Below, piece after piece: positions 15,502 to 48,905 of a stretch of DNA of 64,000 nt. Below the pieces are notes generated by a model. It was not told where the DNA came from and made no database searches. It saw only the letters and a program-made list of their open reading frames with translations. Within the stretch, counting starts at the first letter, position 1; every line of letters starts with the position of its first letter. The DNA lies in contig NIVC01000386.1 in assembly GCA_002269645.1 (NCBI GenBank), positions 434,001-498,000 of the forward strand. Direction: 5' to 3'. Source of the stretch: Macrostomum lignano. Taxonomy: Eukaryota. Made by a program: the position numbers and the translations under genes.

Positions 15502-15792
15502 TCAGCACCTGGGCAAAGCGCTCCGCCTGGCCCTTGGTCGCCGTGTGGAATAGCGTGAGATGTGCCGGATGCCGTTGGACCTGACGAACTCAGCGAACTC
15601 GGCTGGAGCGAATTGAAGCCCGTTGTCCGACACCAAAGTCCTCGGTAGGCCGAGACGAGAGAAGACTTCTCGCAGGCAGTTGATCGCCCTGCTCATCCTG
15701 TGCACCTCTGGCCACTTGCTGTGCGCGTCGACCTGGACCAAGGTCCACGGGTCCCCCGAAGTCGAAGTGTAACCGCTCCCAACAAGGCTCAA
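15502..15792 (-). mobile_element. Ty3/Gypsy LTR-retrotransposon integrase relic
   Basis: VDAHSKWPEV..INCLREVFSRLGLPRTLVSDNGLQF..EFAEFVRSNGIRHI is a typical Gypsy rve motif series; degenerate. Confidence 0.85.
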
Positions 15793-15821
15793 TCGGGGAA
15801 ACTACCTACCTTTGCTTGATG

Positions 15822-17695: not shown

Positions 17696-18005
17696 GAAAT
17701 AATCGCGAAGAGAATAAAAGCCGTCGTTTCTAAACCGCAAGCAGTGACTCAGTTTACAGATAAAGTATTTTATCGGCAAATTTTAATTGCTGGGAGTCCT
17801 CAAGCCTTCGTCACTTAAGAATTTATTATTCGAAGAACAAGCCAACAAAGTGAAAGCAGATTTACAGGTGCTGCAGATTTTTAGCACAGTTTACAAAGCG
17901 CAATACAAGCAAAATTAGTTTGCTTCGTATGAAAATGCGAAAGACAGGAACTCCAAAACACCGATTGAGTCTGGCAAACCCGATTGATGAAGAATGAAGC
18001 TGTGA

Positions 18006-21000
18006 TTACAGCAGCATGTCGGCAAAGTACTGATCGAACTCCTCCTCTCTGAAAGCGGATTTGAAAGGCGAAGAAACTGCAGTGAGAAACCTCGGTTTCC
18101 ACGGCAGAGACCAGCTAACCTGCAGGAATTCCCACCTGCCCCCCCCCCCCCGAGACCAGCTAACCTGCAGGAATTCCCACCTGCCCCCCCCCGAGACCAG
18201 CTAACCTGCAGGCATTCTCACCTGCCCCCCCCCCAGAGACCAGCTAAGCTGCAGGCATTCCACCTGCCCCCCCCCCCAGAGACCAGCTAAGCTGCAGGCA
18301 TTCCCACCTGCCCCCCCCCGAGACCAGCTAAGCTGCAGGCATTCCCACCTGCCCCCCCCCAGAGACCAGCTAAGCTGCAGGCATTCCCACCTGCCCCCCC
18401 CCCAGAGACCAGCTAAGCTGCAGGCATTCCCACCTGCCCCCCCCCCCCCAGAGACCAGCTAAGCTGCAGGCATTCCCACCTTCCCCCCCCTAGAGACCAG
18501 CTAAGCTGCACAAAATCACACCTGGACGCGCCCTCATCTTCCACAGCCGGAGCTGGTTGTCGCCAAATTTCGCTCGCGTCAGCAGCTACCGCGTCTCCGG
18601 GCGGCTCCGCTGCTGCCTGCTGCTGCTCTGCTGCCTGCCGGATGGCGCGGATCCCCGCCAGGACTTCGTCCTCAGCCTCCGTATCGGCGGCTGCGTCAGC
18701 TTCGGCTTTGGCTTGCAGCGGCTGCGTTGCCGACTCGGAAAGACGCTGCCGCTTGGCCTCGCGTCTGCGGTGCCTTCGGGTTCGGCATGCGGCGGGTTAG
18801 GGTGCCGAGGTGATGATGGCGAGGTGATGATGCTGAGGTGATTACACTGAGGTGATGATGCTGAGGTGATGATGCTGAGGTGATGATGCTGAGGTGATGA
18901 TGCTGAGGTGATTACACTGAGGTGATGATGCTGAGGTGATTACACTGAGGTGATGATGCTGAGGTGATTACACTGAGGTGATGATGCTGAGGTGATGATG
19001 CTGAGGTGATTACACTGAGGTGATGATGCTGAGGTGATGATGCTGAGGTGATGATGCTGAGGTGATTACACTGAGGTGATGATGCTGAGGTGATTACACT
19101 GAGGTGATGATGCTGAGGTGATTACACTGAGGTGATGATGCTGAGGTGATTACACTGAGGTGATGATGCTGAGGTGATGATGCTGAGGTGATTACACTGA
19201 GGTGATGATGCTGAGGTGATTACACTGAGGTGATGATGCTGAGGTGATGATGCTGAGGTGATTACACTGAGGTGATAATGGCGAGGTGATGATGCTGAGG
19301 TGATGATGCTGAGGTGATTACACTGAGGTGATAATGGCGAGGTGATGATGCTGAGGTGATGATGCTGAGGTGATGATGCTGAGGTGATGATGCTGAGGTG
19401 ATGATGCTGAGGTGATGATGCTGAGGTGAGGATGCTGAGGTGAGGATGCTGAGGTGAGGATGCTGAGGTGATGATGCTGAGGTGATGAGTTAATTAATTT
19501 AAGGTGATGCTAACCAAAGGTAAAGATTTGAGCAGACTAGTTAATGACGCTAAGCAGCTGCACCTGTCAATCACTCACTTTTTCTTATAGTTGAGCCGTG
19601 CCGAGCAGTCCGGGCAGAGGCGCAGCTTCACCAGCGCATTTTTTGTTTCTCCGCCCTCGGTGTAGCGAAAGTTCACCTCCCAGCTGACCAGGCCGTCAGC
19701 CTGCGGACGGTTAAAATTAGTTCCAATGATTACAGCTAGCTTCCATGATGATGAAGAAACAAAAAGGCTGGGATGGGGGGTCGATTTCACAAGCCCGAAA
19801 CTTCCTATCGTGGAATTCGAGTTGAGTTAACAAAAAATGACAGCAGTACACATGACCAGAGGTGAGGATGCTGAGGTGAGGATGCCCTAGTGAGGATGTT
19901 GAGGTGAGGATGCTGAGGTGAGGATGCTGAGGTGAGGATATTGAGGTGAAGATGCTGGGGTGAGGATGCTGAGGTGAGGATGCTGAGGTGAAGATGCTGA
20001 GGTGAGGATGCTGAGGTGAGGATATTGACGTGAAGATGCTGAGGTGAGGATGCTGAGGTGAGGATGCTGAGGTGAGGATGCTGAGGTGAGGATGCTGAGG
20101 TGAGGATGCTGAGGTGAGGATGCTGAGGTGAAGATGCTGAGGTGAGGATGCTGAGGTGAGGATACTGAGGTGAAGATGCCCTAGTGAGGATGCTGAGATG
20201 AGGATGCTGAGGTGAGGATGCCCTAGTGATGATGCTGGGAGGGTGCTAAGGTAGGGATTCTGAGGTGGTCTTAACCACAGCTGTGAGCAGCCTCATAGCG
20301 AGGCACTCACCTGCTCGCAGCGCTTCCCGCCGCAGGCGAACTGCCCCCTGCCGGACAGAACCTCAGCCTCTGTGCGCCATCGCAGGCCGACCCGGCCCTC
20401 CTTGTAGCCCCTCAGGTCGGCAATGCAGTACTCCTTGTACAGCTTGTCCCAGTAGCGCTTGGCGAGCCGCTGCTCCCAGCTACCGGCCTCCTCGGAGCCG
20501 CCGTCCCACACGAACCGGTGGTGCTCCCTGATGATGTCGATGTCTCGCTTGTCGCGCGAGGCGTCCCTTTTGAAGTCAGCGTAGCTGCCGCCGAAGTACC
20601 TGGAAATTGGATGGCGCAGATGGGGCTTTTGATCTAAGCTCCGTGCATGGACCTGTGCTCACCGGAGCCGCGCCTGCGACACCAGCCGAAACCCGAATCC
20701 CGATTGGACGATTGGCTTTGATTTTGAAGATAAGGGAGGGTTGTGACACCCGATTTTGAGGATAAGGGAGGGTTGTGACACCCGATTTTGAGGATAAGGG
20801 AGGGTTGTGACACCCGATTTTGAGGATAAGGGAGGGTTGTGACACCCGATTTTGAGGATAAGGGAGGGTGCTGACACCCGATTTTGAGGATAAGGGAGGG
20901 TGCTGACACCCGATTTTGAGGATAAGGGAGGGTTGTGACACCCGATTTTGAGGATAAGGGAGGGTGCTGACACCCGATTTTGAGGATAAGGGAGGGTTGT

Positions 21001-21921
21001 GACACCCGATTTTGAGGATAAGGGAGGGTTGTGACACCCGATTTTGAGGATAAGGGAGGGTGCTGACACCCGATTTTGAGGATAAGGGAGGGTGCTGACA
21101 CCCGATTTTGAGGATAAGGGAGGGTTGTGACACCCGATTTTGAGGATAAGGGAGGGTGCTGACACCCGATTTTGAGGATAAGGGAGGGTTGTGACACCCG
21201 ATTTTGAGGATAAGGGAGGGTTGTGACACCCGATTTTGAGGATAAGGGAGGGTGCTGACACCCGATTTTGAGGATAAGGGAGGGTGCTGACACCCGATTT
21301 TGAGGATAAGGGAGGGTTGTGACACCCGATTTTGAGGATAAGGGAGGGTGCTGACACCCGATTTTGAGGATAAGGGAGGGTTGTGACACCCGATTTTGAG
21401 GATAAGGGAGGGTTGTGACACCCGATTTTGAGGATAAGGGAGAGTGCTGACACCCGAGTTGAAGACAAGGGAGGCAAAGCTGCTGATTACTGCGAGCTTA
21501 GTCAATTACCAGTGGGCTATGCAAGTTAAGCAGAGATGGCTACGGTTAGTACGCAGCTGAATAGGCTGCTTGTTTACCAGCATGCGGACGGCTACCTGAT
21601 GTAGTTGTTCACCAGCATCTTGTGCCTCGAATAGGCGTCCATCGCCAGCAGCTGCTGCCTCCGAGCGCCGGCCTCTTCTCGACAGGCACCGTCGGCGACT
21701 GCCACGCCGCCGCTCCGCCGCGGTGCACCAAAACCGGATGTTGACGAGGCAGCAGCCGCCCTTGCCTCATCGCGGGGACGCGAGCGCTTCCGGTTGGACA
21801 CCGAAGCGAGCCGCACGGAGGCGGCGTCCTCCGAGGCCGCCTGGCTGACGGAGTCCTCGAAACCGAAGTCCGACTGCCAGTCATCGGGCCCGACGTCGTT
21901 CGCCGTTGGCAACGGCTCGGC
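18006..21921 (-). CDS. FRA10AC1: Protein FRA10AC1 homolog (spliceosome-associated), 5 exons; start codon not genomically evident
   Basis: Exons 21921-21596, 20599-20311, 19700-19579, 18773-18522 and 18048-18006, all GT-AG with consistent phases (1032 nt). Motifs REEA..R..LLAMDAYSRH..VNNYIRYFGG, HRFVWD, WEQRLAKRYWDKLYKEYCIADL, GLRWRTEAEVLSGRGQFACG, SWEVNF..KNALVKLRLCPDCS and EEEFDQYFADMLL*. Confidence 0.95.
18105..18505. repeat. 41-45-bp minisatellite in FRA10AC1 intron 4
   Basis: Unit gagaccagctaagctgcaggcattcccacctg(c)n, about 9 copies. Confidence 0.95.
18805..19490. repeat. 14-bp minisatellite in FRA10AC1 intron 3
   Basis: Interleaved gaggtgatgatgct and gaggtgattacact units. Confidence 0.95.
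19858..20240. repeat. 14-bp minisatellite in FRA10AC1 intron 2
   Basis: gaggtgaggatgct units, related to the intron 3 array. Confidence 0.95.
20722..21460. repeat. 32-bp minisatellite in FRA10AC1 intron 1
   Basis: gataagggagggttgtgacacccgattttgag with a tgct variant, about 23 copies. Confidence 0.97.
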
Positions 21922-21940
21922 CTGCGAAGTGGGTTGGGGA
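21922..21940 (-). promoter_or_regulatory. Unpaired 3' splice acceptor (putative SL trans-splice site) of FRA10AC1
   Basis: Sense strand ...cccctccccaacccacttcgcag|GCC GAG CCG; no convincing upstream coding exon or donor between it and the preceding gene's polyA signal. Confidence 0.6.
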
Positions 21941-22925
21941 GGGGCGGAACCTGTGGCTGAGGAGGAGCGCAACGGCTGGGGACGAGCGGAACCTGTGGCT
22001 GGGAGGGGCGGAGCCTGTGGCTGGGGCGGAACCTGTGGATGGGGGCGGAACCTGTGGCTGAGGGCGGAACCTGTGGCTGAGGGCGGAACCTGTGGCTGGG
22101 GGCGGAACCTGTGGCTGGGGAGGGGGGAATGTTGACTGGGGGCGGAACCTGTGGCTGGGGGCGGAACCTGTCGCTGGGGCGGAACCTGTGGCTGGGGAGG
22201 GGCGGAATGGTGACTGGGGGCGGAACCTGTGGCTGGGGAGGGGCGGAACGGTGGCTGGGGGCGGAACCTGTGGCTGGGGGCGGAACCTGTGGCTGGGGCG
22301 GAACCTGTGGCTGGGGCGGAATGGTGGCTGGGGGCGGAACCTGTGGCTGGGGAGGGGCGGAATGGTGACTGGGGGCGGAACCTGTGGCTGGGGCGGAACC
22401 TGTGGCTGGGGAGGGGCGGAATGGTGACTGGGGGCGGAACCTGTGGCTGGGGGCGGAACCTGTGGCTGGGGGCGGAACCTGTGGCTGGGTTCGGAACCTG
22501 TGGCTGGGGGCGGAACCTGTGGCTGGGGGCGGAACCTGTGACTGGGGGCGGAACGGTGACTCGGGGCGGAACCTGTGGCTGGGGGCGGAACCTGTGGCTG
22601 GGGGTGGAACCTGTGGCTGGGGGCGGAACCTGTGACTGGGGCGGAACGGTGACTCGGGGCGGAACCTGTGGCTGGGGGCGGAACCTGTGGCTGGGGAGGG
22701 GCGGAACGGTGATTGTGGCGGAACCTGTGGCTGGGGGCGAAAACTGTGGCTGGGGAGGGGCGGAACGGTGACTGGGGGCGGAACCTGTGGCTGGGGGCGG
22801 AACCTGTGGCTGGGGGCGGAACCTGTGGCTGGGGTGGAACCTGTGGCTGGGGTGGAACCTGTGGCTGGGGGTGGAACCTGTGGCTGGGGTGGAACCTGTG
22901 GCTGGGGGCGGAACCTGTGATTGAG
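21935..22925. repeat. G-rich minisatellite of about 19-20 bp (ggggcggaacctgtggctg) in the zinc-finger/FRA10AC1 spacer
   Basis: Direct tandem array with composite variants. Confidence 0.95.
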
Positions 22926-23070
22926 GAGGGGTGGACAAGAAAAACAAGTGGCTATATTTTTCATAAAAAGTGCCATTACAGCAACATATAAAATGAGCAG
23001 AGCCAACAGAAATCACAAAGCCAAACATGCCAATTCGGGTCAGATTCAGACTCAGATGAGTGCAGCAGTT

Positions 23071-23076
23071 TTTATT
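23071..23076 (-). terminator. Putative AATAAA polyadenylation signal of the zinc-finger gene
   Basis: tttatt on the + strand, about 800 nt past the stop at 23866 in AT-rich UTR-like sequence. Comparable signals lie at 33457-33462 (NDUFB9) and 17822-17827 (FRA10AC1). Confidence 0.5.
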
Positions 23077-23207
23077 ATTTTTATCAACAAATACAGGCAG
23101 CAAAATGCAATCCAAATATGGTTCAAAGCACACAGAGCGGAGAGTCAGAAAAGCTACGAGCTGCTCATTGATTGCTTCGTAGAAACCGTGCATGGGATGA
23201 AACTGAC

Positions 23208-23705
23208 GGGCGAATGACTGAGTGGTGCCGGGGCAAATGACTGAGTGGTGCCGGGGCGAATGACTGAGTGGTGCCCGAGCGAATGACTGAGTGGTGCCGA
23301 GCGAATGGCTGAGTGTGCCGAGCAAATGGCTGAGTGTGCCGAGCGAATGACTGAGTGGTGACGGGGCGAATGACTGAGTGGTGCCGGGGCGAATGACTGA
23401 GTGGTGCCGAGCGAATGACTGAGTGGTGACGGGGCAAATGACTGAGTGGTGCCGAGCGAATGACTGAGTGGTGACGGGGCAAATGACTGAGTGGTGACGG
23501 GGCGAATGACTGAGTGGTGCCGAGCGAATGACTGAGTGGTGACGGGGCAAATGACTGAGTGGTGCCGAGCGAATGACTGAGTGGTGACGGGGCAAATGAC
23601 TGAGTGGTGACGGGGCAAATGACTGAGTGGTGACGGGGCAAATGACTGAGTGGTGACGGGGCAAATGACTGAGTGGTGCCGGGGCGAATGACTGAGTGGT
23701 GCCGG
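23208..23705. repeat. Minisatellite of about 23 bp (aatgactgagtggtgacggggc-like)
   Basis: About 21 tandem copies within the putative 3' UTR. Confidence 0.95.
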
Positions 23706-23865
23706 GAGAACTGGAGCAGAGTGCAAAAGTACAGGACTGACAGGCTAATAACAGAGCATTCCTTGGCCTCGGCTGTTCGACAATCGAAAACAAAAAGAAG
23801 CGCAATACAAATAAGTTATAAATTAAATGTTAATTTTATGATTGGATGAGCTGCTTTGCTAACTG

Positions 23866-30400: not shown

Positions 30401-32235
30401 GTGGCTATAGATGGGGATCAGTGGCTATAGATGGGGATCAGTGGCTATAGATGGGGATTAGTGGCTATAGATGGGGATCAGTGGCTATAGATCAGTGGCT
30501 ATAGATCAGTGGCTATAGATGGGGATCAGTGGCTATAGATGGGGATCAGTGGCTATAGATGGGGATCAGTGGCTATAGATGGGGATCAGTGGCTATAGAT
30601 GGGGATCAGTGGTTATAGATCAGTGGCTATAGATGGGGATCAGTGGCTATAGATGGGGATCAGTGGCTATAGATGGGGATCAGTGGCTATAGATGGGGAT
30701 CAGTGGCTATAGATGGGGATCAGTGGCTATAGATGGGGATCAGTGGCTATAGATGGGGATCAGTGGCTATAGATGGGGATCAGTGGCTATAAATGGGGAT
30801 CAGTGGCTATAGATCAGTGGCTATAGATGGGGATCAGTGGCTATAGATGGGGATCAGTGGCTATAGATGGGGATCAGTGGCTATAGATGGGGATCAGTGG
30901 CTATAAATGGGGATCAGTGGCTATAGATCAGTGGCTATAGATGGGGATCAGTGGCTATAGATGGGGATCAGTGGCTATAGATGGGGATCAGTGGCTATAA
31001 ATGGGGATCAGTGGCTATAGATCAGTGGCTATAGATGGGGATAAGTGGCTATAGATGGGGATCAGTGGCTATAGATGGGGATCAGTGGCTATAGATGGGG
31101 ATCAGTGGCTATAGATGGGGATCAGTGGCTATAAATGGGGATCAGTGGCTATAGATGGGGATCAGTGGCTATAGATGGGGATTAGTGGCTATAGATGGGG
31201 ATCAGTGGCTATAGATCAGTGGCTATAGATGGGGATCAGTGGCTATAGATGGGGATCAGTGGCTATAGATGGGGATCAGTGGCTATAGATGGGGATTAGT
31301 GGCTATAGATGGGGATCAGTGGCTATAGATGGGGATCAGTGGCTATAGATCAGTGGCTAAGCGGGCAAGTGAACAGGGAGATCTCCGGCCACTCACTCGG
31401 CTCCTCAACTGTCAGCACCTCGTGCCGCTCGGCACGGACATCGACCAGCTCCACGGGCCGGAAGCCGGGCGGCGGCCTGCCGAAGCGCATGCCCAGCAGG
31501 CGCCTGTAGGGCTGCTGCATGAGGAAGGCGCGGCCTTCAAGCAGGCCACCGGATTCGTCCATCAGGCTGTCCAGCTGCCGCACGTAGGCGTCCGAGACTA
31601 CGCAGAGGCCGCGAACGGGCCACCTGGCCTGGTCCATGGTGGCGAAGGTGGCCGGGTCATCCGCCAGGTACTTGCCCCAGGTGGTGGCGCCGCGGGCAGC
31701 GTCATGGCCGAGCCCACCTGCGGCAGGCGGTCGCAGCCGGAGGCCGGCTCGAACAGCTCGCGCAGAACTCGAACGAGCAGGTGAGCATGGACAGGTAGAC
31801 GGAGCTCGGGTCAGACGACTCGGCAGCGGCCAGCCCGGCCAGAAGGCGGCGGTCCCTGTCCGACGGGCGCTGCCTGGCGAACCTGGCCAGGAAGCCGGGC
31901 TTCGGGCGCACCAGGCCGCGCCGGTGCAGCAGCAGGCTGGTGAGGTTCAGCGGCGCCCCGGCCGAGGACGGCGCCGTTGACGGCTCGGACAGTCGGCGCC
32001 GGATGTCCGAGTCGTCCGGACAGCAGGTGAGGGAGCCGAGACTGCGCCGGATGTAGCAGTCGGGGGGCACCGGATGCACTGCGTTGGGGCCGCGCTGCTG
32101 CGGTGACGGCGAGCGGCGGCGGCGTCGGCGGCGAGGCTGCGGCATCTCCTGAAAGGATGAAGCGTCGCCTGCGGGGGCAGCTGCGGGCTCGGGGGGCGGC
32201 TCAGCTGGCTGCTCTTCGTCCTGGTCTGACGACAT
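23866..32235 (-). CDS. Large multi-C2H2 zinc-finger protein (about 1300 aa) with an unrecognised N-terminal region; 6 exons; two apparent 1-nt deletions in exon 1
   Basis: Exons 32235-31397, 29462-28844, 28346-27866, 27305-26991, 25870-25403 and 25026-23866 have compatible phases once 2 nt are restored in exon 1 (near 31770 and 31695). Fingers: CHLCDG..HIKLIQHMHYLH, CEACSKEF..LRVHLHNVH, CGLCGHHF..LRNHMAAVH, CEMCKKVF..LAVHRQRVH, CPHCQASL..LLSHIKQIH, CPVCQK..LSDHVISQH and CGVCTLSF..LLQHRRASH. The 27866/27305 join uses a weak donor (TTG|GTGACA), so this could be two genes. Confidence 0.75.
25070..25355. repeat. Imperfect (AATC)n microsatellite in zinc-finger gene intron 5
   Basis: Runs of aatcaatc. 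Confidence 0.9.
25912..26962. repeat. 28-bp minisatellite in zinc-finger gene intron 4
   Basis: aactgaggatctgggaggctggcccagc, about 37 copies. Confidence 0.97.
27310..27456. repeat. (GACA)n/(GGCA)n microsatellite, resuming after the SINE at 27819-27850
   Basis: Direct observation. Confidence 0.95.
27457..27818 (+). mobile_element. tRNA-derived SINE inserted in a microsatellite
   Basis: A-box TAGCCCAGCGG (27465-27475), B-box GGCTCGATTCC (27507-27517) and tail taataaaaaaaa; the body matches 57860-58068. Confidence 0.75.
28635..28790 (+). mobile_element. Degenerate tRNA-derived SINE with a CORE-like segment
   Basis: A-box-like TGGCGCAGCG (28640), B-box GGTTCGATTCT (28707) and tgtgtccttgagcaagacac (28737-28756). 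Confidence 0.5.
29620..31355. repeat. 20-bp minisatellite in zinc-finger gene intron 1
   Basis: ctatagatggggatcagtgg, about 85 copies. Confidence 0.97.
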
Positions 32236-32257
32236 TGCGCTGCGGGAAGGAGGAGGC

Positions 32258-37382: not shown

Positions 37383-40300
37383 CTGACTGATTGACAATGA
37401 CAGGGGAATGACAGCTGGAATGCCAGTCAGCAGGGTGACACTGCAGCAATTAGTAAGGAGGATGAAATCAACATCAACTCGCGTAGAGGTAAAGACAAGC
37501 GTGAATTTACACTGTTGCTCGTATATAATTTCATAATGCTTCAATACCATGAAAACCTGTTTATATACTAAGAATATGATTAATATGCTGTGCTGAATTT
37601 TTAATTTTACTTTTAACCTAACCAAATTAATCAATCACGAAATGCATGTTTATGCTAGCGATGTGATATTAAAAAGCAAGATTGAGAATAAAAGTGGAAT
37701 TGTATTGAAATTATCACAATATAATCCAAAAGTACAATGTCAGCTCAAATAATCTCTTATACATTGTTGATGCACTTAAATCCTAATTTGCTTTTTGGTG
37801 CCCTAGAGTGATTTTTGCCTTTATGCCTAACTTTTTATATACAAGTAAAATATTAATACTTTATTTAAATACAAAACTGATAGGTCTATATTATTTTATT
37901 AAACATGCCTATTAGTAATAGCAATTTTTTTAATTCCAAACTTTCCACCAAATGTTAAAATTGTAGACCCCAAAATCTTATAAGGCCAAGAAAATGACTG
38001 ACATTAAATTAGGCAAGATCAAACCAAAAATAAACAAAAAACCAAGAGTATGCTAAGGTTGATACCTAACAACTAAGATTATTATAATTTGTACTTGAAA
38101 ATAACTATAAATGCCATGGTTTTCAAATATCAAAGTCACTAAAATATTAGTAATGTTAATTACAATTGGCTAATTTAAAATGTTTGCTAGAAAAAATTAT
38201 AAAATTGAAAATCTATATGATAGCTAAGTAGCATTACATTAGCCTAGCTAAAGATGGGAAGAAACTGAAATTTTTAACCAATTCAATTTGATTTAAATAT
38301 CTGACAATCAATTCAAATATCAGATAATACTAAATATGGTTATATCAGTGAATAATATCTCTTTGGTAGCCTTTAACCAATAGGCCATCATCTTTACTTC
38401 TTTTTCAATTAAAATGCATTTACCCCTTCAAGTTTGTGGGAATTAGCACCTCCACAAATCCATGCTCAACTCGATTCCTAATCTTTCACTTTTCCTTAAA
38501 GCTTCAAATCTAAGTACAATTTACATGCAACTGCTTTTAAATCACCTCTGCCTTTCCTTAAGACATGCCATGTATTATCATTTCCTTAATTTTCTCTCTA
38601 TATTTATGAGCCACAAGCTGTCCAAAACCCCTAGCACTTCACTTTGGTCTTTGACTCTTCAAACTCAAACTTCTCAGCCCTCTACTCTTTCTAAAGCCTT
38701 CATAAATCTTAACACAAAATGATTTATTGTTATATCTCTAATCCTTTTGCCTTTCCTCAGATCACAACTATCCCTAATTCTTTTCCTTCATTTATAAGCC
38801 ACAACATCAATACTCTACTCTTAATTTGTTTCAAATAATCTTTCCACATCAAAGCAATTATTTGGCATTTTCTTGTAGATTGTCAACTTTTTCATTCCAA
38901 TTTGAACCAAATATTCTAAATATTCATCCTATTTCTAAACCTAGCATAGGCCTACCTATTTATTGATAAAACAATATCTAAAATTGTTTTTTATTTCTAG
39001 ATTATAAAAACCATATAACATTTTTAGAAAGAAGAAAGAGAAAGAAAAGAAAAGAAAAAAGGCAAAAAAATCATATACAGAGTGAAAATTAAGTTGCAAT
39101 TGGGAGAACTAAGTCGCAATCAAGAGGAACTACATCATAATTTGGAGGAACTAAGTTGCAAATCTGAACAAAACTAAGTTGCACCGGATGCGTGAAATTT
39201 TAAGGTTAGGCGTGTAAGTGTATTCCCGCATTTACACAATATTGATTCAAAGTTGGAGCCAAAATACATGTAAACTGCCATTTAAAATAGAAAAAATTAT
39301 GCAATTTTTTAAAATATATATATCAATGGTGTTTTTCTCTTTAGTGTATTATCCAAAATGGCATAAAAACAAGACAAAACAATCATCTCATTTCCAGCTC
39401 TTCCCACAACTCCAGTAATGGCACTGATTTTTTGGTAAATGGCAGGAGTAACTATTACCACTATTTTATAAGAAAGTGATTTGTTATCTTATTAGTCAAG
39501 TTGATTTTAATTTTACCATCAAGTTTCATTGCATTGGGCATTATATGTGTATATAAGCATGTATGTACATGAATACACTTGGCTTATTTTTTTATCAAAA
39601 AAGCAACTTAACTATGAAAGAAGAATAAGCAAAGTTAATATAATGTTTGGGTAAATGGTAGGAATAACTATAACTGTATTATAAGGGCTAAATGCCTTAT
39701 CAGCAAATTAGGCCCTAATACTACTTTTAGAATTTTTTGAATAGGCATTTTTGCAGCTTACCTTGGCTGGGCCCCTTGCCAACCAGCTAGATTGGCTTGG
39801 TATTGCATCTAGATGATCTACATAAGGACAAAAGCGGAATAATCCTGTATTAATCCATATATTAAAAATGGTCTGTCAGTAGGTAGGTATGTGTGTGATT
39901 GATTCTAGAAAAAATGGCTGAACTGATTTTCTTTACACTTGCACTATTCAATCAGAATTATGGTCTAAGGATTAAAATTCCAATATATAGTGCATCTACT
40001 TCTATATTAGTAGCATCTACTTATCTTATTGGTAGTGTCTATACATGTACTGTACTCTTTGGCCTAAGCGGTTTAATGACACTGTCTACTTATTTACTCT
40101 TATAAGTTTTTTCTCAGTCTTAGGCATTCCCTAGATCAGAGGGTCACAACCTTATGCATTTTCCTTGCCCTAAAGCAATTTTTGTGCCCTGATGCACTTT
40201 CTTGCTGATTAGTGGGCTTTTTAATACTACTCCCAATTTGGGGATTTACTCTAGGAAATGAATAAGTCTTTAAAAGTTTTGCAAATAAGTTTTTTTTAGA

Positions 40301-40719
40301 ACTAGATTGGCTATTATTCTCGCAATTTGGGGTGAATAAGGAAGTTCCATGTTAACTTCTCCTGGCCCATTCTGGGCTCCTATTTATACTACCTATACAG
40401 TATATTTAAAACAAAAAGTTATTTGGTAAAATATTATTTGATTTAACAACATTTAAACAAATGTAAAAATAATTTCTTTTTAGCATAAATTCAAATGGTA
40501 CTTTCTAGGAAATGTTTTGTGAACATATTTAATACTTATACTGGAAGGCCTTATCCTATAAAACAAAGCATACTACATCAATATAATCATGGTAATATTA
40601 GTAATAATAATAGTACAGTAACATTAATAGTAATAGCATTAATATTAATAATATTAAGATTAAAAAAATAATGCTTGTTATTATTAAAAAATAATAATAT
40701 TAATAAAAATAGCTTTTGG

Positions 40720-41190
40720 TATACTAAGTATTTAGAAAACATTGTAACAACCATTGCTAAAGAATATCTCAGTCTATGAAGCATCTTTGTTAGTCTTTAA
40801 TGTGTCTTTTATAGCAAGGAATGCATAAAGCAGCAGTGCAATTTTCATGCAGAAAGAGCACAGCCTCTGAAAAAATGGTTATATGATTCAAACAGCAACA
40901 TCAAACAGCATTTGGTATATCTAGAAAATGTTGTAACAACCGTTGCTAGGGAATATCTCAGCTTGTAAAGCATCTTTGTGTGTGTCTAATGTGTCTTTCT
41001 AAAGTTATGCCTAAAGCAGCTGTACAATTTTCATTCAGAAAGAGCAAAGTGCAACAATGTAGCGGCTCTTTAAAAAGCAACTATATACATATTTGGTATA
41101 TTGGGAAATGTCGTAACAACCATTGCTGGGGAATATCTTAGCTTGTAAAGTGTCTTTGTGTGTGTCTGGGATGTATTTTTAAAGTAGAGA
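40720..41190. repeat. Diverged tandem repeat of about 185 bp, 3 copies
   Basis: tggtat...gaaa(a/t)(c/g)(a/t)tgtaacaacc.ttgct..gaatatct.ag...aagcatctttg recurs near 40720, 40915 and 41095. Confidence 0.75.
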
Positions 41191-41957
41191 CATGCATAAA
41201 AAAGTCTAAAAATTTACATTGTCTTGCATACTAATTAGACAATTTTGTTTAACATTTACTGATCAATTTCTGAATGTCAGAATGTCTATCAGGAAACCAA
41301 TACATGGTTAGGCATATGCTATTTAAGACAAGTGCATAATTTGGTTATTATTTAATTTAGTTTAAGCCTACTAAAATATATAAAAATTGATATTATAAAT
41401 TTGATATAGATTTTAACTGTGAACTTTTACACTAGCAATTGAACTATCTATGGTCATAATTCTTAAAGACCCAGACAGTTACTAAAGAGCTGGGCACACT
41501 AGAGAAAATGGAATTAACTAAGAACAAGCAGAGCGAGACAAGGGCTCCTACAATAATGAATTATTTTTGCTCCTTTTTGTTGATACAAATATATAATTAG
41601 ACAGAACAAACCATCTTATGAATACACATCAAAAATATATATAGGCTCATTCCATATAAGCACGGTCGTAACATGACAGACTATTTTTACTTATAAAATG
41701 AAATATAATAATAGAATATACTAAACCAATATTTAAATGAAAGATAATTTTGTCAAGAATATTTTTATAGAGTTTCATGCAGATATCGCCGGGGCTGTTG
41801 CCCCCAGGACCCCGGGTCCTGCACGTAATGGCGTGGTGAACTATCTGTGCAGTATGAGACTGGTATGGCCTTTATCCCAGCCAGCGATGCTCACACCTGC
41901 CTCCCCTGGCGGGCTGATAGCTCAAGAGACTCTGTCTCCTGATTTTCACCTTGCAAG

Positions 41958-42027
41958 GCGCACTTCGAAGGGTACTCGTCCCGTGGGTGTTAAGGCAGGC
42001 CCCCTTGGGCCCTGCCAAGCTGATTCG
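41958..42027 (+). ncRNA. Candidate HDV-like self-cleaving ribozyme in the LINE 5' UTR
   Basis: P1 GCGCAC/GTGGGT (G1-U wobble, one G-G mismatch), P2 CGAA/TTCG, P3 GGG/CCC, L3 TACTCGT, P1.1 AC/GT, P4 GGCAGG-CCC..GGG-C-CCTGCC and J4/2 C42020-TGA, all in the nested double-pseudoknot order. Confidence 0.5.
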
Positions 42028-42263
42028 TTGGCACCGGGTCCTGGTGTGACCATAAACGCACCCTCTAATGTCCCAGTGTAACTCCGTGCTGATGGACGCT
42101 TGGCCAGGGAGTAGTCTGGTCGCTAACGGTTCCCCTTGCGCTTTTGGGTCCCCCCGCAGGGTGGTATTTTGCTTTTTGGGGGCCTGCCGCTTGGTTTGGG
42201 GTTGCGGCCTTGCGGCTCTTTGCCTGTGTTCTGCAGGAAGTCCCACCTTTTTACTTCCAGCCA

Positions 42264-43784
42264 ATGGCTTCTAACCGAAGTAACCAACCGGCTGTGGATG
42301 ACACAGTGCCTCCGGCCTCGGCTGGGGCCGTGGACTCCTCGGCCATACCACCTGCTACCATCGGGGACGCCTCGGCGAGACCCGTGGAGCCAACTCTGAG
42401 TGGTGCCTCCGAGAAGACACCTGCTACTCCAGCTGCTAAGAAACGCAGCACCACCTCTGGAGCTGCCCGCCGTCGACTTAACAAGGCGAGGCGGGCCAAG
42501 GAGGGCGGAAGCCAAACCGGTGCCAGGGGCCAACGGCCCGCGGCAGCGGAAGCTTCCCAGTCTGGGGCGGTGGCGGAAGAGGGCCTCGAGCCCACGGAAG
42601 CCCCTGCCCAGGATAGGGAGGCCGATGCAGCCGGGAGGGTGGACAGCCCACCTGAAGAAAGCTCCACTGACCCCCGGGCCTCCTACGCTGATGCGGCAAA
42701 GAGGCAACCGGCAGTTGTCATCCTGGGAAAGGACGCGCGCCTGTCTCCCGATCAGCTGAAGCAGGTGAGAAGTGCCGTTGATGGCCTCCTGTGGAAGCAA
42801 ACTCTGAAGGGCACGCCTCTGAACATTCATTCGAATGCGACGAGGGACTCGTGCCTTCTCATTTGGCCCAGTGATGCTGACTCGGGTTGGCGGCTCCTTG
42901 AGCTGCTGCCCGAGCAGAGCTGGGACCTCAACCTAGCCTTCTGCAGAGAGGACGAGCGCCCCCGGACCAAGAGGCATCGAATCTGGGTCCCGGCCAGGAG
43001 CGTTGTTACCTCTGCTGACGAGCTCCGGAAAGGACTGCTAGCAGTCAACCGGGAGCTTCCCGCCGCGGGCCTAGTGGTGCATGACACCCTTAAGCGCACC
43101 GACGGCACTGGCTTCACAGCCATCCTGGGGCTGTCGGACGCCTGGATGAGGCGTTATCCACACGGCAGCTTCATCAACGTCGGCCTTTGGAAGCTGCGCA
43201 TCCGCTCCTACGAGGCCGACCCTCCCCGTGGCAGTGAGCAGGGCGGGCAGGATGCGGAGGCGGCCGGGGCCGAGGCGCAAGCCTCTGCTCAGACTGCCAA
43301 AGCAAACCACCCTGCCCGGCAGCACGGCCGCGCGGGCAAAGCTGAGCGCGCTGCTGAGGGCGGAGGCGACCGACACCCGGCGCGTAGCACCAAGCGGCGC
43401 GGCCTGTACCAGCGTGCAGCTGAGGCAGTCCGTACCGCCAAAATCTCCCAGCTGAGGCGAGAGGTTGCCGGGACGCCTAGGCGCACCAGTTCGTCCAGGG
43501 AGGGTGGGGACGTCCCAGCTGGGCCCAACGCCTCGGGGCAGGGCCGACTGGAGACGGACCCGCCTGCCCAGGCGGCTGGCTGCTCCAGGGCATTGGGCCA
43601 ATCTGAGGCGGAGGACCCCATGGATGGTGGGCAAAGGGCGGCGAATGCTGCCTACTGCCTTCCGGCCAATCGGGGGCCTTTTGCTGAAGAAGAGCCCATG
43701 GACACCGGCGACCCCGACCCGAAGCCGGTGAGCGCCGAGGAGGAGGAGGAACTCCTGGCGGCTGCAACATCCGATCTGCAATGA
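42264..43784 (+). CDS. LINE ORF1 (gag-like, DUF4780-like central domain)
   Basis: ATG at 42264, 506 aa; basic N-terminus, YADAAK and VVILGKD..L..Q..V..WVP..VHD..F.AILGL segment typical of LOA-type ORF1. Confidence 0.8.
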   Translation: MASNRSNQPAVDDTVPPASAGAVDSSAIPPATIGDASARPVEPTLSGASEKTPATPAAKKRSTTSGAARRRLNKARRAKEGGSQTGARGQRPAAAEASQSGAVAEEGLEPTEAPAQDREADAAGRVDSPPEESSTDPRASYADAAKRQPAVVILGKDARLSPDQLKQVRSAVDGLLWKQTLKGTPLNIHSNATRDSCLLIWPSDADSGWRLLELLPEQSWDLNLAFCREDERPRTKRHRIWVPARSVVTSADELRKGLLAVNRELPAAGLVVHDTLKRTDGTGFTAILGLSDAWMRRYPHGSFINVGLWKLRIRSYEADPPRGSEQGGQDAEAAGAEAQASAQTAKANHPARQHGRAGKAERAAEGGGDRHPARSTKRRGLYQRAAEAVRTAKISQLRREVAGTPRRTSSSREGGDVPAGPNASGQGRLETDPPAQAAGCSRALGQSEAEDPMDGGQRAANAAYCLPANRGPFAEEEPMDTGDPDPKPVSAEEEEELLAAATSDLQ

Positions 43785-46700
43785 TGCCAGCGACTACCTG
43801 GTGTCTGCAGATCAACACCCAGCACTGCGTGGCGGCGTCGGTCAACCTGATGCGCACGGCAGAGCAACAGCTTCCGGGCCTGGTCTTCGTACAGGAGCCC
43901 TGGATGACTAAAGGTAAGCCAAATAATGTGCCATCTGGCTACCACTGTTTTTGCATGGCGGGCTCTCAGCCTCGCCCAAGATCTTTGGTCTTTGCTGCAA
44001 AAGCTTTTGAGGCATGGATGAGACCTGATCTCTCGACTGGGGACATCTGTGTTGTTCAAATCAATAACCTCATTCCCAATAAACCTGTGCTGGTAGCTTC
44101 TGCCTATTTCCCGGGCGATGCCCCAGTTGTCTGCGACGCGTTAGTCAACCTTACTGACTATGCTGCGTCCCATCGGTTCGAGCTGCTCATTGCAGGGGAT
44201 GTGAACGCACACCACCTGCATTGGGGCAGCAAGAACATCAATAGCAGAGGCGAGGAGCTGCTGGCCTATGTCAGCAGCACTAACCTCAACTTCTGTAACG
44301 TGGGCAATGCACCAACATTCAATAATGGGCGGTGGGCTGAAGTCATCGACACCACCATCGCCTCACCCGGACTGCTTTCCGCAGTTACGGGCTGGCGAGT
44401 GTGGGACGAGGACTCGCTCTCGGACCACCGCTTTATCCGCTTTTGCATTGGGCCGACCAAGCAAAAGCCTAAGGTCACTTGGAGTCGGAACGTCAGGAAC
44501 ACCGATTGGGCCGCCTTTGGCTTGAAGCTGAGCCGCGGCCTTCGGGATCTTGACCCCCCCAGTGACCTCTCTGACTGCCAGGTGGTGGACGATCTCGCCT
44601 CCTCCCTGGGCGGGGCGATCACCACTGCCTTTGAAGCAGCCTGCCCCCTAAAGGCCTATAAAGGCAAGAAATCTGCTCCCTGGTGGAACCCAGAGCTCGG
44701 GGCCCTTCGGCGCCGAGCCAGGACCCTCCAAAGGCGAGCGCTCAAAACCAAAGACCCATCTGACAGAGAGGTCTATACCCGTGCGATCCATGAGTTTAAG
44801 GGCCAAGTCAGAAGGGCCAAGACGGCCAAGTGGCGCCAATATTGCGAAGGGCTTGAGGGCTCTCGCCCCGTAGCCCGCGTGGTTAAGGCACTCACTAATG
44901 ACCGTTTTTCTAAACTCTCTGTTGTGAAGAGACCTGACGGCTTGGTCACAGAGAGTTCGGAAGAGACTCTAGAGCTCATGCTCAACAGTTTTTTTCCCTA
45001 AATCTCTGACTCAGCAGGGCCCGCCCGACCACACAGTGGGAGGGCAAGGCCTAGCAAAGTCTATGATCACCAAAGACCGCATTATTAGAGCGGCAAGGTC
45101 CTTTAACCCGTTCAAGGCGCCTGGGCCCAACGGCATCTACCCAGCGTTCTTGCACGAGGCGGTGAAAAACCACCGCTTCCTGGACCTGCTCTGTCGTCTC
45201 CTTCGAGCTTGTGTGGAGCTGGGCTATGTACCAGTTGCATGGAGAGAGGCCCGGGTGGTCTTTATCCCCAAGCCTGGAAAGAGCGACTACCAATCGGTGA
45301 AGGCCTTCAGGCCTATCAGCCTCACTTCTTTCTGCCTCAAGCTCCTCGAGAGACTGGTGCTTTGGCGCCTACTTTCGGTCGAGCTGAAGCGCTTCCCACT
45401 CTCGCAGAACCAGCACGCCTTCCGCGCGGGCAGGTCAACCGAGAGTGCTCTCCATGTCATTGTTGACTTCCTGGAGAGGGCCGTTCTTGGCAGCGGCTTT
45501 GCCCTCTCGCTTTTCCTGGACATTGAGGGGGCCTTCGACAACGTCATCTTCGAGGCCTTTTGCAGAGCCCTGGAATCCAGGGCCACGCACCCTCACCTTG
45601 TCCGGTGGATCATGTTCATGATTCGAAACCGCACTGTTGTGGCCCACCTGAGCGGCAGCTCTCTTTCGGTGCCTGTCCTGAAAGGGGGCCCCCAGGGCGG
45701 CGTTCTCACCCCCATTCTCTGGAACATGGTCATGGATGAGTTGCTTTGCAGTGATCTCCACGACCCCATTCTCAAGGTGGGCTATGCCGATGATGTGACC
45801 GCGATATGCGCGGGCCCCTCGGTTGATACCATCAGAGACCTTCTGCAGGGCTTTCTGGGACGAGCGGAGCGTTGGGCAGACCAATGTGGCCTTAGACTCT
45901 CAGAGTCGAAAACCACAGCAGTCATGTTTACCAACAAACTGCTCTGGACCATTAAGCCCCTCACCCTCTATGGAAAGAATATTTCCATGGAGAAGCAGGT
46001 CCGCTGCCTGGGCCTCACTCTGGACCACAGGCTTAACTGGACTCCGCACATTCAAACTAAAGCCAAAAAAGCCCTGGCTATACTGGCTCAGATCAGGCGC
46101 GCCGTGGGCACCACCTGGGGGCTCACCCCCAGGAAGCTGTGGTGGATTTACACTGCCATCATCCGCCCCTCGATCAGTTACGCCAGCCTCGTGTGGGCTA
46201 GCGGCCTGAGCGTCAAGAGCAACCTCGATGCTCTCTACAAAATCCAGGGCAGAGCCTGCCGCATGACTATGGGCGCTCCACCCTCTACTCCTTTTGAAGG
46301 CATGAATGCCTTCCTCTGTGCCCTTCCTTTGGATATTTATATCAAAGGAGAGGCGGCGAAGAGCACCCGGCATCTTCTGGATGCTGGGGTGGCCTTCAAG
46401 AAAGTGCGGGCCTTTAAGAAGCGGTCGCTTATCCCGCACTCTGACCTCTGCCTCAAGGCTCTCGAGGAGTGTGGCGGGCTCAACATCCTCACGGACTCGA
46501 TCCCAGCCACCCTTCTCCTGAGCCAAAGGTATAAGGTCACCATTCAGCCTCGACACGAGGCGAGTGACAGCTGGAGCGACTCTGAAGTCCACTGTTACAC
46601 TGACGGCTCTATGAGGCATGGTCTTTCAGGCTTCAGAGCTTGCGTCTTCTTCAAGGGAGAAGTGGTGTGGAGCTACTCCCAGCACACTGGGCTCAACTCC

Positions 46701-47487: not shown

Positions 47488-48500
47488 CGACACCACTTCA
47501 ACGGAAGTCGTTGGTCGCCAGGGGCTAGCGGAATGGGCGGTCTCCTCCGCCTCCTCGCTGCATCCGCCGGACGCCCCCTGCAGCTAAGTCAAGTAAGTCA
47601 AGTTCATGTAGATATCATCATTAGTATAGATGCTATTAAACCTTGAATGGCACTTATGGTCGTAACAACAGGATTTTTGACATATAGAAACTAAAAGGTA
47701 AAAGTCTTATAACATTTTTTATTTTTGATATTTTGCAATACATTTTTTAAAATTTGACTAACAACATCTTCAGTAATCATACTATTTTTGTAGAATATAT
47801 AAACTCAAAAGGCAACAAAGATACAAAAGAAAAGGCAGCCTTATGGTCGTAACATTATGGTCGTAACATATTTTTGTCTGTCAATTCAGTAACTTTGAGG
47901 TACCAATATATTAAAAATATAATAGATTATTTGGTCACCAATACTTTTATCTGATGATGCAAGTACTATACTTTTATCTATAGTTTGTTTCAACCTTCCA
48001 AAGCTTTCTATTTGTTTTTAAAAGGTACACAAACTTAATGATGTCTTTTGCTTAGAAAAATGTCCAAATTTTTACAAAAATGACTTTTTGCCACTTGATA
48101 ACATACTAATCCAACATTTTATCATTCCTTTATTCTTAGATTATAGATATTACACATAAAAAACATTTGGTAAAAAAATGGCTGATAAGGCAATGGCAAG
48201 CAAAAATATTGACTTTTTTCTATTTTCCAAAAATGTTCATCTTAAATGGAATGAGCCTATAGCTTATTAGCTTTTGTAAGATTAGGATTATCCATTTTCT
48301 ATTTTTTTCATTTGAAAAATGTTTAGACATAAGTAGTAAAGTAGTACATATATATATATAAATGTATGTTCATATATATATTGTTAATATATTATATATG
48401 TTCCTAGCATTACTCTTTAATTTTTTTCATTTGTAGTTAAACATTATCACAAGCACTTATAGCAAATTTGTACTATGAAACTAGCAAAAGAATGCATCCA

Positions 48501-48905
48501 GGACTATTTGTCTTCCAGACTATTTGTCTGCCCTAAGCAAATGGCCAGTGGACTATTTGTCTTCCAGACTATTTGTCTGCCCTAAGCAAATGGCCAGTGG
48601 ACTATTTGTCTTCCAGACTATTTGTCTGCCCTAAGCAAATGGCCAGTGGACTATTTGTCTTCCAGACTATTTGTCTGCCCTAAGCAAATGGCCAGTGGAC
48701 TATTTGTCTTCCAGACTATTTGTCTGCCCTAAGCAAATGGCCAGTGGACTATTTGTCTTCCAGACTATTTGTCTGCCCTAAGCAAATGGCCAGTGGACTA
48801 TTTGTCTTCCAGACTATTTGTCTGCCCTAAGCAAATGGCCAGTGGACTATTTGTCTTCCAGACTATTTGTCTGCCCTAAGCAAATGGCCAGTGGACTATT
48901 CGTCT
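48501..48905. repeat. 49-bp tandem repeat, about 8 copies
   Basis: ggactatttgtcttccagactatttgtctgccctaagcaaatggccagt. Confidence 0.97.

What the first reader, a model, noticed from the sequence alone, without database searches (positions are those of the whole stretch)
21596..21940. FRA10AC1 appears to lack its own start codon: the spliced leader's AUG would supply it in frame
The exon starts at cag|GCC GAG CCG (phase 0) and encodes about 95 residues, including DWQSDFGFED and REEA..RR, which resemble the conserved FRA10AC1 N-terminus. The first in-frame ATG is inside the conserved LLAMDAY motif. Upstream are only a minisatellite and the previous gene's UTR and polyA signal. Flatworm SL exons are known to end in AUG that can act as the initiator, giving M-A-E-P-L-P. 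The gene would then be obligately dependent on trans-splicing for translation. The alternative is a weak cis exon such as ATG CAC GGT... near 23190, which lies 5' of the zinc-finger gene's AATAAA and has only a poor phase-0 donor.
Basis: partly seen in the sequence, partly recalled or inferred. Interest (0 to 1): 0.75.

Follow-up and report, generated by a model that had tools for sequence, protein, structure and literature searches.

The report
Flatworm gene borrows spliced-leader start codon
In the flatworm Macrostomum lignano the FRA10AC1 gene has no start codon of its own and almost certainly takes it from the AUG at the end of the trans-spliced leader, a mechanism already documented in flatworms, so this is a clean new example and not a new kind of thing.

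Summary
The window is Macrostomum lignano scaffold NIVC01000386.1 (assembly Mlig_3_7). The feature is exon 1 of FRA10AC1 (Mlig005215.g4) on the minus strand, 21921-21596.

- The exon begins right after ttcgcag| in phase 0.
- It encodes the conserved N-terminal motifs [YW]xS[DE]F and REEA.
- Its first in-frame ATG is codon 94, inside LLAMDAY. Two out-of-frame ATGs precede it.

Supporting evidence:
- GenBank models of all three genomic copies are "partial" and start at exactly this base. The annotation pipeline trimmed the leader and cut transcripts at leader-read peaks.
- The published 35-nt M. lignano leader ends in ATG, so leader plus exon reads ATG|GCC GAG, in frame.
- In a related species' RNA contig the acceptor itself forms an in-frame TAG directly before the conserved A-E-P, and no ATG precedes MDAY.
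- The region before codon 94 is under purifying selection (dN/dS about 0.22).

The long open frame upstream in this copy is a minisatellite artefact, since it closes or lacks an ATG in the other two copies. The gene probably lies downstream of a zinc-finger gene in an operon.

I could not see leader-junction reads directly. Leader-AUG initiation is known (Cheng et al. 2006), so this is a new member of a known kind and of modest interest.

The parts
21922..21923 (-). AG of the 3' splice acceptor, inferred to be the spliced-leader trans-splice site (ttcgcag|GCC)
   Evidence: Sequence. The GenBank CDS of g3, g4 and g5 all start at the next base. In the relative, homology begins exactly after its ttttag.
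21924..21960 (-). Pyrimidine-rich tract upstream of the acceptor, formed by the last, degenerate minisatellite unit (ttccgcccctccccaacccacttc)
   Evidence: Sequence. Identical in the three copies.
21596..21921 (-). FRA10AC1 exon 1: 326 nt, phase 0 at its 5' end, 108 codons plus 2 nt, no start codon of its own before codon 94
   Evidence: The three differences between g3 and g4 are all synonymous. dN/dS is 0.22 against the relative for the 87 aligned codons before Met94.
21853..21882 (-). DWQSDFGFED, the conserved N-terminal [YW]xS[DE]F motif (codons 14-23)
   Evidence: Alignment of 13 FRA10AC1 proteins; S and F are invariant.
21670..21681 (-). REEA, the conserved (K/R)EE(A/G) motif (codons 81-84)
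   Evidence: Both E are invariant in the alignment.
21640..21642 (-). First in-frame ATG (Met94, within LLAMDAY)
21882..21884 (-). First ATG inside exon 1. It is out of frame (+1) and opens a 95-codon overlapping ORF.
21768..21770 (-). Second ATG inside exon 1, also out of frame (+1)
21594..21595 (-). GT of the exon-1 donor (CAG|gtagcc)
   Evidence: The junction is confirmed by the spliced RNA contig of the relative.
20311..20599 (-). FRA10AC1 exon 2 (core Fra10Ac1 domain)
19579..19700 (-). FRA10AC1 exon 3
18522..18773 (-). FRA10AC1 exon 4. The acceptor at 18773 gives KKKHRRRE, as in the GenBank models and the relative's RNA. A second AG 9 nt downstream (exon start 18764) gives the UniProt form without HRR.
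18005..18048 (-). FRA10AC1 exon 5 coding part, ending EEEFDQYFADMLL plus TAA (18007-18005)
17822..17827 (-). AATAAA poly(A) signal of FRA10AC1
   Evidence: Sequence.
21986..22931 (-). 19-nt minisatellite (about 49 copies) filling the outron or intergenic spacer. It has no stop codon in any frame on this strand.
   Evidence: The spacer is about 213 nt in copy g3 and about 1030 nt in g4 and g5.
23071..23076 (-). AATAAA of the upstream C2H2 zinc-finger gene (its CDS ends at 23866)
23156..23193 (-). Rival candidate cis exon A: ATG CAC GGT ... CAG CTC|gtagct (12 codons, phase 0), inside the zinc-finger 3' UTR
   Evidence: Identical in the three copies and absent from every annotated model.
23026..23028 (-). 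In-frame ATG of rejected candidate exon B (ATG TTT GGC ... CAG|gttccg)
   Evidence: A 1-nt indel between copies destroys its frame.

Best explanation
FRA10AC1 of Macrostomum lignano (Mlig005215.g4) is made as an outron-bearing precursor, probably as the downstream gene of a polycistronic unit with the C2H2 zinc-finger gene. The 35-nt spliced leader is trans-spliced onto the acceptor at 21923-21922.

The leader ends in AUG and exon 1 begins in phase 0 with GCC. The mature mRNA therefore reads ...UUGCAUG|GCC GAG CCG. The leader AUG is the first AUG on the mRNA, in a good context (G at -3, G at +4). It opens a 344-codon ORF, MAEPLPTANDVGPDDWQSDF..., that encodes the whole conserved protein. The gene has no initiator of its own, so both capping and translation depend on trans-splicing.

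Shown here:
- the gene structure;
- the absence of an own ATG in three copies and in one relative;
- coding constraint on the region before Met94;
- the frame match with the published leader;
- annotated 5' ends exactly at the AG.

Inferred: that the annotated 5' end is a leader junction, that ribosomes start at the leader AUG, and that the gene belongs to an operon.
For: 1. Organism and record: the window is identical to NIVC01000386.1 of GCA_002269645.1.
2. The three GenBank models g3, g4 and g5 are 'partial' and start AEPLPT. Their CDS starts at the base after ttcgcag|. An independent UniProt model also has no Met.
3. The annotation pipeline trimmed leaders and cut transcripts at leader-read peaks (PMC5730564).
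4. The leader ends in ATG (PMC8629364). Wiberg et al. 2023 note that the final ATG of Macrostomum leaders is a start codon (PMC10468722).
5. The motifs before Met94 are conserved across Metazoa, and orthologues start 6-25 residues before [YW]xS[DE]F.
6. dN/dS is 0.22 over the 87 aligned codons before Met94. Indels keep the frame. The three g3/g4 differences are all synonymous.
7. The relative's spliced RNA contig has an in-frame TAG formed by its acceptor directly before A-E-P, and no ATG in any frame before MDAY.
8. Two out-of-frame ATGs precede Met94 in exon 1.
9. The upstream frame closes after 38 codons in g3 and holds no ATG in 347 codons in g5.
10. Leader-AUG initiation is established in flatworms: Cheng et al. 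2006, as cited in PMC12582326, PMC9851317 and PMC3510090.
11. The spacer from the zinc-finger AATAAA to the acceptor is about 1150 nt, of which 946 nt is minisatellite. That is about 200 nt after repeat adjustment, within the operon criterion of PMC8629364.
Against: No leader-junction read or leader-bearing cDNA for this gene could be seen with the tools available. The trans-splice site is inferred from where the annotation starts.

The six bases before the junction (TCGCAG) do not exactly fit the enriched [T/C]TNCAG motif, although only 44% of sites carry that motif.

Candidate exon A (23193-23158) is in frame, is conserved in all three copies, and has the same GTAGC donor as the real exon 1.

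Parasitic flatworms often share one acceptor between cis- and trans-splicing (PMC12582326), so an additional cis isoform is possible.

The species and library type of the relative's contig are unknown.
Confidence: 0.8

Rival explanations
1. A cis-spliced upstream exon supplies the start codon. The exon ATG CAC GGT TTC TAC GAA GCA ATC AAT GAG CAG CTC|gtagct (23193-23158) would be spliced to the acceptor at 21921, giving MHGFYEAINEQL-AEPLP...
For: It is in frame, at phase 0 on both sides, and identical in g3, g4 and g5. Its donor pentamer GTAGC equals the authentic exon-1 donor. Flatworm acceptors can serve both cis- and trans-splicing (PMC12582326).
Against: - It lies inside the zinc-finger gene's 3' UTR, upstream of that gene's AATAAA. 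A transcript starting there would need a promoter inside a minisatellite. On a read-through transcript the ATG would sit far downstream of a roughly 1100-1280-codon ORF.
- None of the three transcript-based GenBank models, nor the UniProt model, contains it.
- The relative's RNA contig runs into unspliced upstream sequence and not into an upstream exon.
- The copies are about 96% identical everywhere, so identity of the exon across them carries little weight.
- The added peptide has no counterpart in orthologues beyond the chance tripeptide MHG.
Confidence: 0.07
2. Translation starts at the internal Met94 (LLAMDAY), and the first 93 codons of exon 1 are a 5' UTR.
For: It is the first in-frame ATG encoded by the gene. 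An automatic ORF caller chose it in the relative (P0002). The Pfam Fra10Ac1 domain proper lies downstream.
Against: - The 93 codons carry two motifs conserved across Metazoa.
- dN/dS is 0.22 with dS saturated, and frame-preserving indels separate the two species.
- All three g3/g4 differences are synonymous.
- Two out-of-frame ATGs (21884, 21770) would intercept scanning ribosomes first, and so would the leader AUG itself.
Confidence: 0.05
3. A non-trans-spliced mRNA is used, with initiation either at a near-cognate codon early in exon 1 (for example TTG codon 4 or ACG codon 6) or at an ATG reached by reading straight through the minisatellite from 23193 or 23028.
For: In this copy the frame is open for 636 codons upstream with two in-frame ATGs. 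Near-cognate codons exist near the 5' end of the exon.
Against: - The upstream frame closes after 38 codons in g3 (TAG) and holds no ATG in 347 codons in g5. In the relative it is closed by a TAG at the acceptor.
- The minisatellite is open in all three frames simply because its unit cannot form a stop codon.
- A 1-nt indel between copies lies in the unique part.
- Sequence similarity to the relative stops exactly at the AG.
Confidence: 0.03

Closest known systems
Flatworm mRNAs that use the 3'-terminal AUG of the spliced leader as initiator methionine (Cheng, Cohen, Ndegwa & Davis 2006, J Biol Chem 281:733; further cases in Echinococcus granulosus, PMC3510090)
   Same: The leader ends in AUG. 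The acceptor is in phase 0 with the main ORF. There is no own ATG before N-terminal residues that are conserved in orthologues. The leader AUG is the first AUG on the mRNA.
   Different: This case is in a free-living basal flatworm (Macrostomorpha), not a parasite. In the papers I could search, leader-AUG use in Macrostomum is only noted in a figure legend (PMC10468722), and this gene has not been described. Translation from the leader AUG has not been shown for it.
slORFs: ORFs created by leader-supplied start codons (slORFfinder, PMC9851317)
   Same: The ORF exists only after the leader is joined to the recipient exon.
   Different: Here the leader-created ORF is the gene's only route to the full conserved protein. 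It is not an alternative or extended ORF.
Downstream genes of Macrostomum lignano operons with repeat-expanded spacers (Ustyantsev & Berezikov 2021, PMC8629364)
   Same: The gene lies on the same strand as the upstream gene. The short unique spacer is inflated by a minisatellite whose copy number differs between copies. The downstream gene appears to be trans-spliced.
   Different: Operon membership is inferred from distance only. No polycistronic precursor spanning both genes was seen for M. lignano.
FRA10AC1 (Pfam PF09725), a conserved protein of animals named after the human FRA10A fragile site, where a CGG repeat lies in its 5' UTR (from my own knowledge)
   Same: The full domain is present, together with the N-terminal [YW]xS[DE]F and REEA motifs and the C-terminal EEFDxYFxDM(F/L)L tail.
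   Different: Orthologues encode their own Met 6-25 residues before the N-terminal motif. The Macrostomum gene does not.

Membership tests
Leader-AUG-initiated flatworm mRNAs (Cheng et al. 2006) | The species' spliced leader ends in AUG | tested here: met
   The published M. lignano leader is CGGTCTCTTACTGCGAAGACTCAATTTATTGCATG (PMC8629364). There is no other ATG within the leader.
Leader-AUG-initiated flatworm mRNAs (Cheng et al. 2006) | The mRNA's 5' end lies at a 3' splice acceptor, with no upstream exon | tested here: met
   The CDS of three transcript-based GenBank models starts at the base after ttcgcag|. The pipeline cuts at leader-read peaks. Homology with the relative starts at the AG.
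Leader-AUG-initiated flatworm mRNAs (Cheng et al. 2006) | Leader sequence physically joined to the exon in RNA (junction reads or cDNA) | not testable with these tools
   There is no access to M. lignano RNA-seq reads. The only related RNA contig (L001) is the unprocessed form that still carries the outron.
Leader-AUG-initiated flatworm mRNAs (Cheng et al. 2006) | Leader AUG in frame with the main ORF, with no stop codon between | tested here: met
   ATG|GCC GAG ... reads through 344 codons to the TAA at 18007-18005.
Leader-AUG-initiated flatworm mRNAs (Cheng et al. 2006) | No in-frame AUG of the gene's own upstream of residues conserved in orthologues | tested here: met
   The first in-frame ATG is codon 94. 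The conserved motifs are at codons 14-23 and 81-84. The same holds in the relative.
Leader-AUG-initiated flatworm mRNAs (Cheng et al. 2006) | Translation shown to start at the leader AUG | not testable with these tools
   This needs Ribo-seq, N-terminal proteomics or a reporter assay.
FRA10AC1 / Pfam PF09725 | Match to the Fra10Ac1 profile above the gathering score | tested here: met
   169.9 bits against a cut-off of 27, E 2.7e-50, covering profile positions 2-118 of 118. Identity to metazoan FRA10AC1 is 46-50%.
M. lignano operon, downstream gene (PMC8629364 criterion) | Same strand as the upstream gene, repeat-adjusted intergenic distance below 1 kb, and the downstream gene trans-spliced | tested here: inconclusive
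   Same strand. About 1150 nt separate the AATAAA from the acceptor, of which 946 nt is minisatellite, leaving about 200 nt. In g3 the spacer is about 335 nt. Trans-splicing itself is inferred, and no precursor spanning both genes was seen.

The most novel reading that the evidence does not exclude
Loss of the gene's own initiator is old and fixed in the genus Macrostomum. This makes FRA10AC1 a permanently obligate client of the leader AUG inside an operon. In humans FRA10AC1 associates with the spliceosome (from my own knowledge). Its dependence on trans-splicing for both cap and start codon could therefore form a feedback loop between splicing capacity and the level of a splicing factor.
Probability: 0.08. 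Interest if true: 0.45.

Novelty: new member of a known kind. Interest (0 to 1): 0.25.

Why it matters
It explains why three GenBank entries and one UniProt entry for this conserved gene are labelled partial. They are complete once the leader's ATG is added.

The same correction probably applies to many trans-spliced M. lignano genes, because the leader, including its ATG, was trimmed before annotation.

FRA10AC1 is also a clean natural test case for leader-AUG initiation in a transgenesis-capable, free-living flatworm. It has no nearby alternative start, and out-of-frame AUGs lie downstream.

It does not reveal a new mechanism.

Tried and rejected
Routes that gave nothing:
1. Pfam on exon 1 alone gave no hit, because the profile covers only residues 128-243.
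2. A protein search with the 94 N-terminal residues plus Met, meant to find leader-bearing transcript ORFs, returned nothing, not even the known P0001. It is therefore uninformative.
3. I looked for direct records of the gene as trans-spliced. No supplements are held for PMC8629364. The gene id appears in no paper. FRA10AC1 is absent from the supplements of PMC12582326. The run SRR28338165 is cited nowhere. Cheng et al. 2006 is not held, so it is cited only through papers that cite it.
4. There is no spliced-leader RNA gene in the window.

Readings rejected:
5. The contiguous 636-codon upstream ORF is a minisatellite artefact. All three frames are open across the repeat. It closes after 38 codons in g3 and has no ATG in g5.
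6. Candidate exon B (ATG at 23028, donor CAG|gttccg) is rejected because a 1-nt indel between copies changes its phase.
7. The M-H-G of candidate exon A matches the first three residues of a rodent FRA10AC1 (P0115). I treat this as a coincidence, since nothing after it aligns.

Not attempted: I did not scan metagenome or prokaryote genome collections for the leader-exon junction, since they cannot be expected to hold flatworm transcripts.

Full report
**What the window is.** The best protein match of the spliced gene model is a Macrostomum lignano protein. The window is base-for-base identical to GenBank scaffold NIVC01000386.1 of assembly GCA_002269645.1, Mlig_3_7. Window position 21921 corresponds to record position 455921. 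M. lignano is a free-living flatworm in which about 30-39% of genes are trans-spliced to a single 35-nt leader, CGGTCTCTTACTGCGAAGACTCAATTTATTGCATG (PMC8629364; PMC5730564).

**The gene.** A five-exon gene lies on the minus strand.
- Exons: 21921-21596, 20599-20311, 19700-19579, 18773-18522 and 18048-18005.
- Stop and poly(A) signal: TAA at 18007-18005 and AATAAA at 17827-17822.
- Splice sites: all internal junctions are AG|...|GT.
- Identity: the product matches Pfam Fra10Ac1 at 169.9 bits, E 2.7e-50, and is 46-50% identical to FRA10AC1 of molluscs, fishes and cnidarians.

**The observation.**
- Exon 1 starts directly after cccacttcgcag| with GCC GAG CCG in phase 0.
- It encodes AEPLPTANDVGPDDWQSDFGFED...CREEAGARRQQLLAMDAYSRHKMLVNNYI.
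- In an alignment of 13 FRA10AC1 proteins, the S and F of [YW]xS[DE]F and the two E of REEA are invariant. Orthologues place their own Met 6-25 residues before the first motif.
- Within exon 1 the ATGs lie at offsets 37 and 151 (both frame +1) and at 279 and 303 (in frame). The first in-frame ATG is therefore codon 94, inside LLAMDAY.

**Is the part before Met94 really coding?** Yes.
- Copies g3 and g4 are about 96% identical over the locus. They differ at three exon-1 positions, all synonymous and all before codon 94.
- Against a relative with 76% amino-acid identity (Logan contig from run SRR28338165, locus L001), the 87 aligned codons before Met94 give dN 0.26, dS 1.21 and dN/dS 0.22. The frame is kept across indels.
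- Initiation at Met94 would delete two pan-metazoan motifs. It would also require ribosomes to pass two out-of-frame AUGs.

**Where does the mRNA begin?**
- Three GenBank proteins are labelled partial and begin AEPLPT: PAA84184.1 (g4, this window), PAA55039.1 (g3) and PAA79370.1 (g5). In all three loci the CDS starts at the base after ttcgcag|.
- The frame is open upstream in every copy. A 5'-partial ORF would therefore have been extended had the transcript begun further upstream. The transcript model must start within 0-2 nt of the AG.
- The pipeline that made these models (TBONE) extracts reads carrying the leader, trims it, maps them, and cuts transcriptional units at the resulting peaks (PMC5730564). 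A model that starts exactly at an AG and lacks a start codon is what that procedure yields when the ATG belonged to the trimmed leader.
- An independent UniProt model (A0A1I8J847) also lacks a Met.

**The relative.**
- Contig L001 has all four introns removed. It still carries 57 nt upstream of the acceptor and about 60 nt beyond its AATAAA, so I read it as a cis-spliced but not yet trans-spliced precursor.
- Its junction is ccggttttag|GCG GAG CCG. The acceptor's own TAG is an in-frame stop directly before the conserved A-E-P. No ATG occurs in any frame before MDAY.
- Nucleotide similarity with M. lignano begins at the AG and is absent upstream.
- The start codon therefore has to be delivered by splicing in that species too.

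**Frame and context.**
- The leader ATG followed by GCC GAG gives MAEPLPT..., an ORF of 344 codons.
- The leader contains no other ATG, so this is the first AUG, 32 nt from the cap, in the context GCAAUGG.
- This last point is read from the two sequences. The strength of that context is general knowledge, not something tested here.

**Rival: contiguous upstream ORF.**
- In this copy the exon's frame is open for 636 codons upstream, with in-frame ATGs at 23193 and 23028.
- The 19-nt minisatellite (21986-22931) is open in all three frames because its unit cannot form a stop codon.
- In g3 the frame closes after 38 codons with no ATG. In g5 it runs 347 codons with no ATG.
- I reject this reading.

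**Rival: candidate exon B.** The ATG at 23028, with CAG|gttccg as donor, is put out of phase in g3 and g5 by a 1-nt indel. I reject it.

**Rival: candidate exon A.**
CTC|gtagct, 23193-23158. It is identical in the three copies, and its donor pentamer equals that of the true exon 1. Sequence alone cannot exclude it.
- Against it, the exon lies in the zinc-finger gene's 3' UTR, upstream of that gene's AATAAA (23076-23071). It is absent from every model, and it has no counterpart in the relative's RNA.
- I give it about 7%.

**Genomic setting.**
- A Complex1_LYR gene, a large C2H2 zinc-finger gene and FRA10AC1 lie head to tail on the same strand.
- About 1150 nt separate the zinc-finger AATAAA from the FRA10AC1 acceptor, and 946 nt of that is minisatellite. 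In g3 the whole spacer is about 335 nt.
- Ustyantsev and Berezikov describe exactly such repeat-inflated spacers in M. lignano operons. They use a repeat-adjusted threshold of 1 kb (PMC8629364).
- FRA10AC1 is thus probably a downstream operon gene. That would independently make trans-splicing obligatory for its expression. This is inferred from distances only.

**Comparison with what is known.**
- All reported flatworm leaders end in AUG, and the AUG can serve as initiator (Cheng et al. 2006, cited in PMC12582326).
- In Schistosoma mansoni the AUG is in frame in 28% of trans-spliced transcripts, and more than 40 cDNAs need it (PMC9851317).
- In Echinococcus granulosus 143 of 187 leader-bearing clusters are full length when the leader ATG is used. 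The usage is conserved among parasitic flatworms (PMC3510090).
- For Macrostomum I found only a remark in a figure legend (PMC10468722). I found no analysis of which genes depend on the leader AUG, and no mention of this gene.
- This case meets every sequence-level criterion of the known class. The two experimental criteria, a junction read and translation from the leader AUG, could not be tested here.

**Verdict.** It is a new, well-behaved member of a known kind. Its practical value lies in correcting 'partial' gene models and in offering a test case for leader-AUG initiation in a tractable flatworm. It is not a new mechanism. Interest 0.25.

Noticed in passing
window 32215-32245 (minus strand); L002 3355-3380; L004 800-830: The upstream zinc-finger gene seems to have two trans-splice acceptors. 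The g5 model starts after cccgcag| (window 32240|32239), 4 nt before the gene's own ATG (32235-32233). There the leader AUG would be out of frame and open a short overlapping uORF. The g3 model starts after gaccag| (window 32221|32220), 15 nt past that ATG. There the leader AUG is in frame and would replace MSSDQ by M.
   Followed up: partly
window 21986-22931 and 23207-23706; L002 9400-9990: Minisatellite copy number differs greatly between the homeologous copies. The 19-mer spacer is about 213 nt in g3 and about 1030 nt in g4 and g5. The 23-mer in the zinc-finger 3' UTR has about 4 copies in g3 and about 22 here. Unique sequence is about 96% identical.
   Followed up: partly
window 18764-18773 (minus strand): Two AG acceptors 9 nt apart at FRA10AC1 exon 4 give isoforms with or without His-Arg-Arg. 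GenBank and the relative's RNA use the upstream one, and the UniProt model uses the downstream one.
   Followed up: partly
window 18840-19510, 19860-20270, 20720-21474: Each of FRA10AC1 introns 1-3 is largely filled by a minisatellite. Intron 1 holds a 32-mer. Introns 2 and 3 hold two related 14-mers. All are stop-free on the coding strand, which produces long spurious ORFs.
   Followed up: no
window 15505-15801 (minus strand): A 99-codon open frame matches the retroviral-type integrase core domain (Pfam rve, E 9.5e-09). It is probably a retrotransposon remnant.
   Followed up: partly
L004 5679-6434 and L004 10001-11591: In copy g5 a mariner-like transposase gene call (HTH_48 / Transposase_1) sits on the opposite strand within the span of the zinc-finger gene. 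The g5 FRA10AC1 model is truncated to 213 residues, with a frame change after exon 2.
   Followed up: no
window 38001-42000 and 48001-52000 against 42001-44000: There are sharp compositional shifts. GC is 30-37% in two blocks and 64% in the block between them. This suggests inserted repeats or transposons. I did not examine it.
   Followed up: no
L001 1-57 and 1195-1260: The relative's RNA contig extends beyond both ends of the mature mRNA, upstream of the acceptor and past the AATAAA, while all introns are removed. This is as expected for a polycistronic precursor, and it suggests the operon arrangement is shared.
   Followed up: partly
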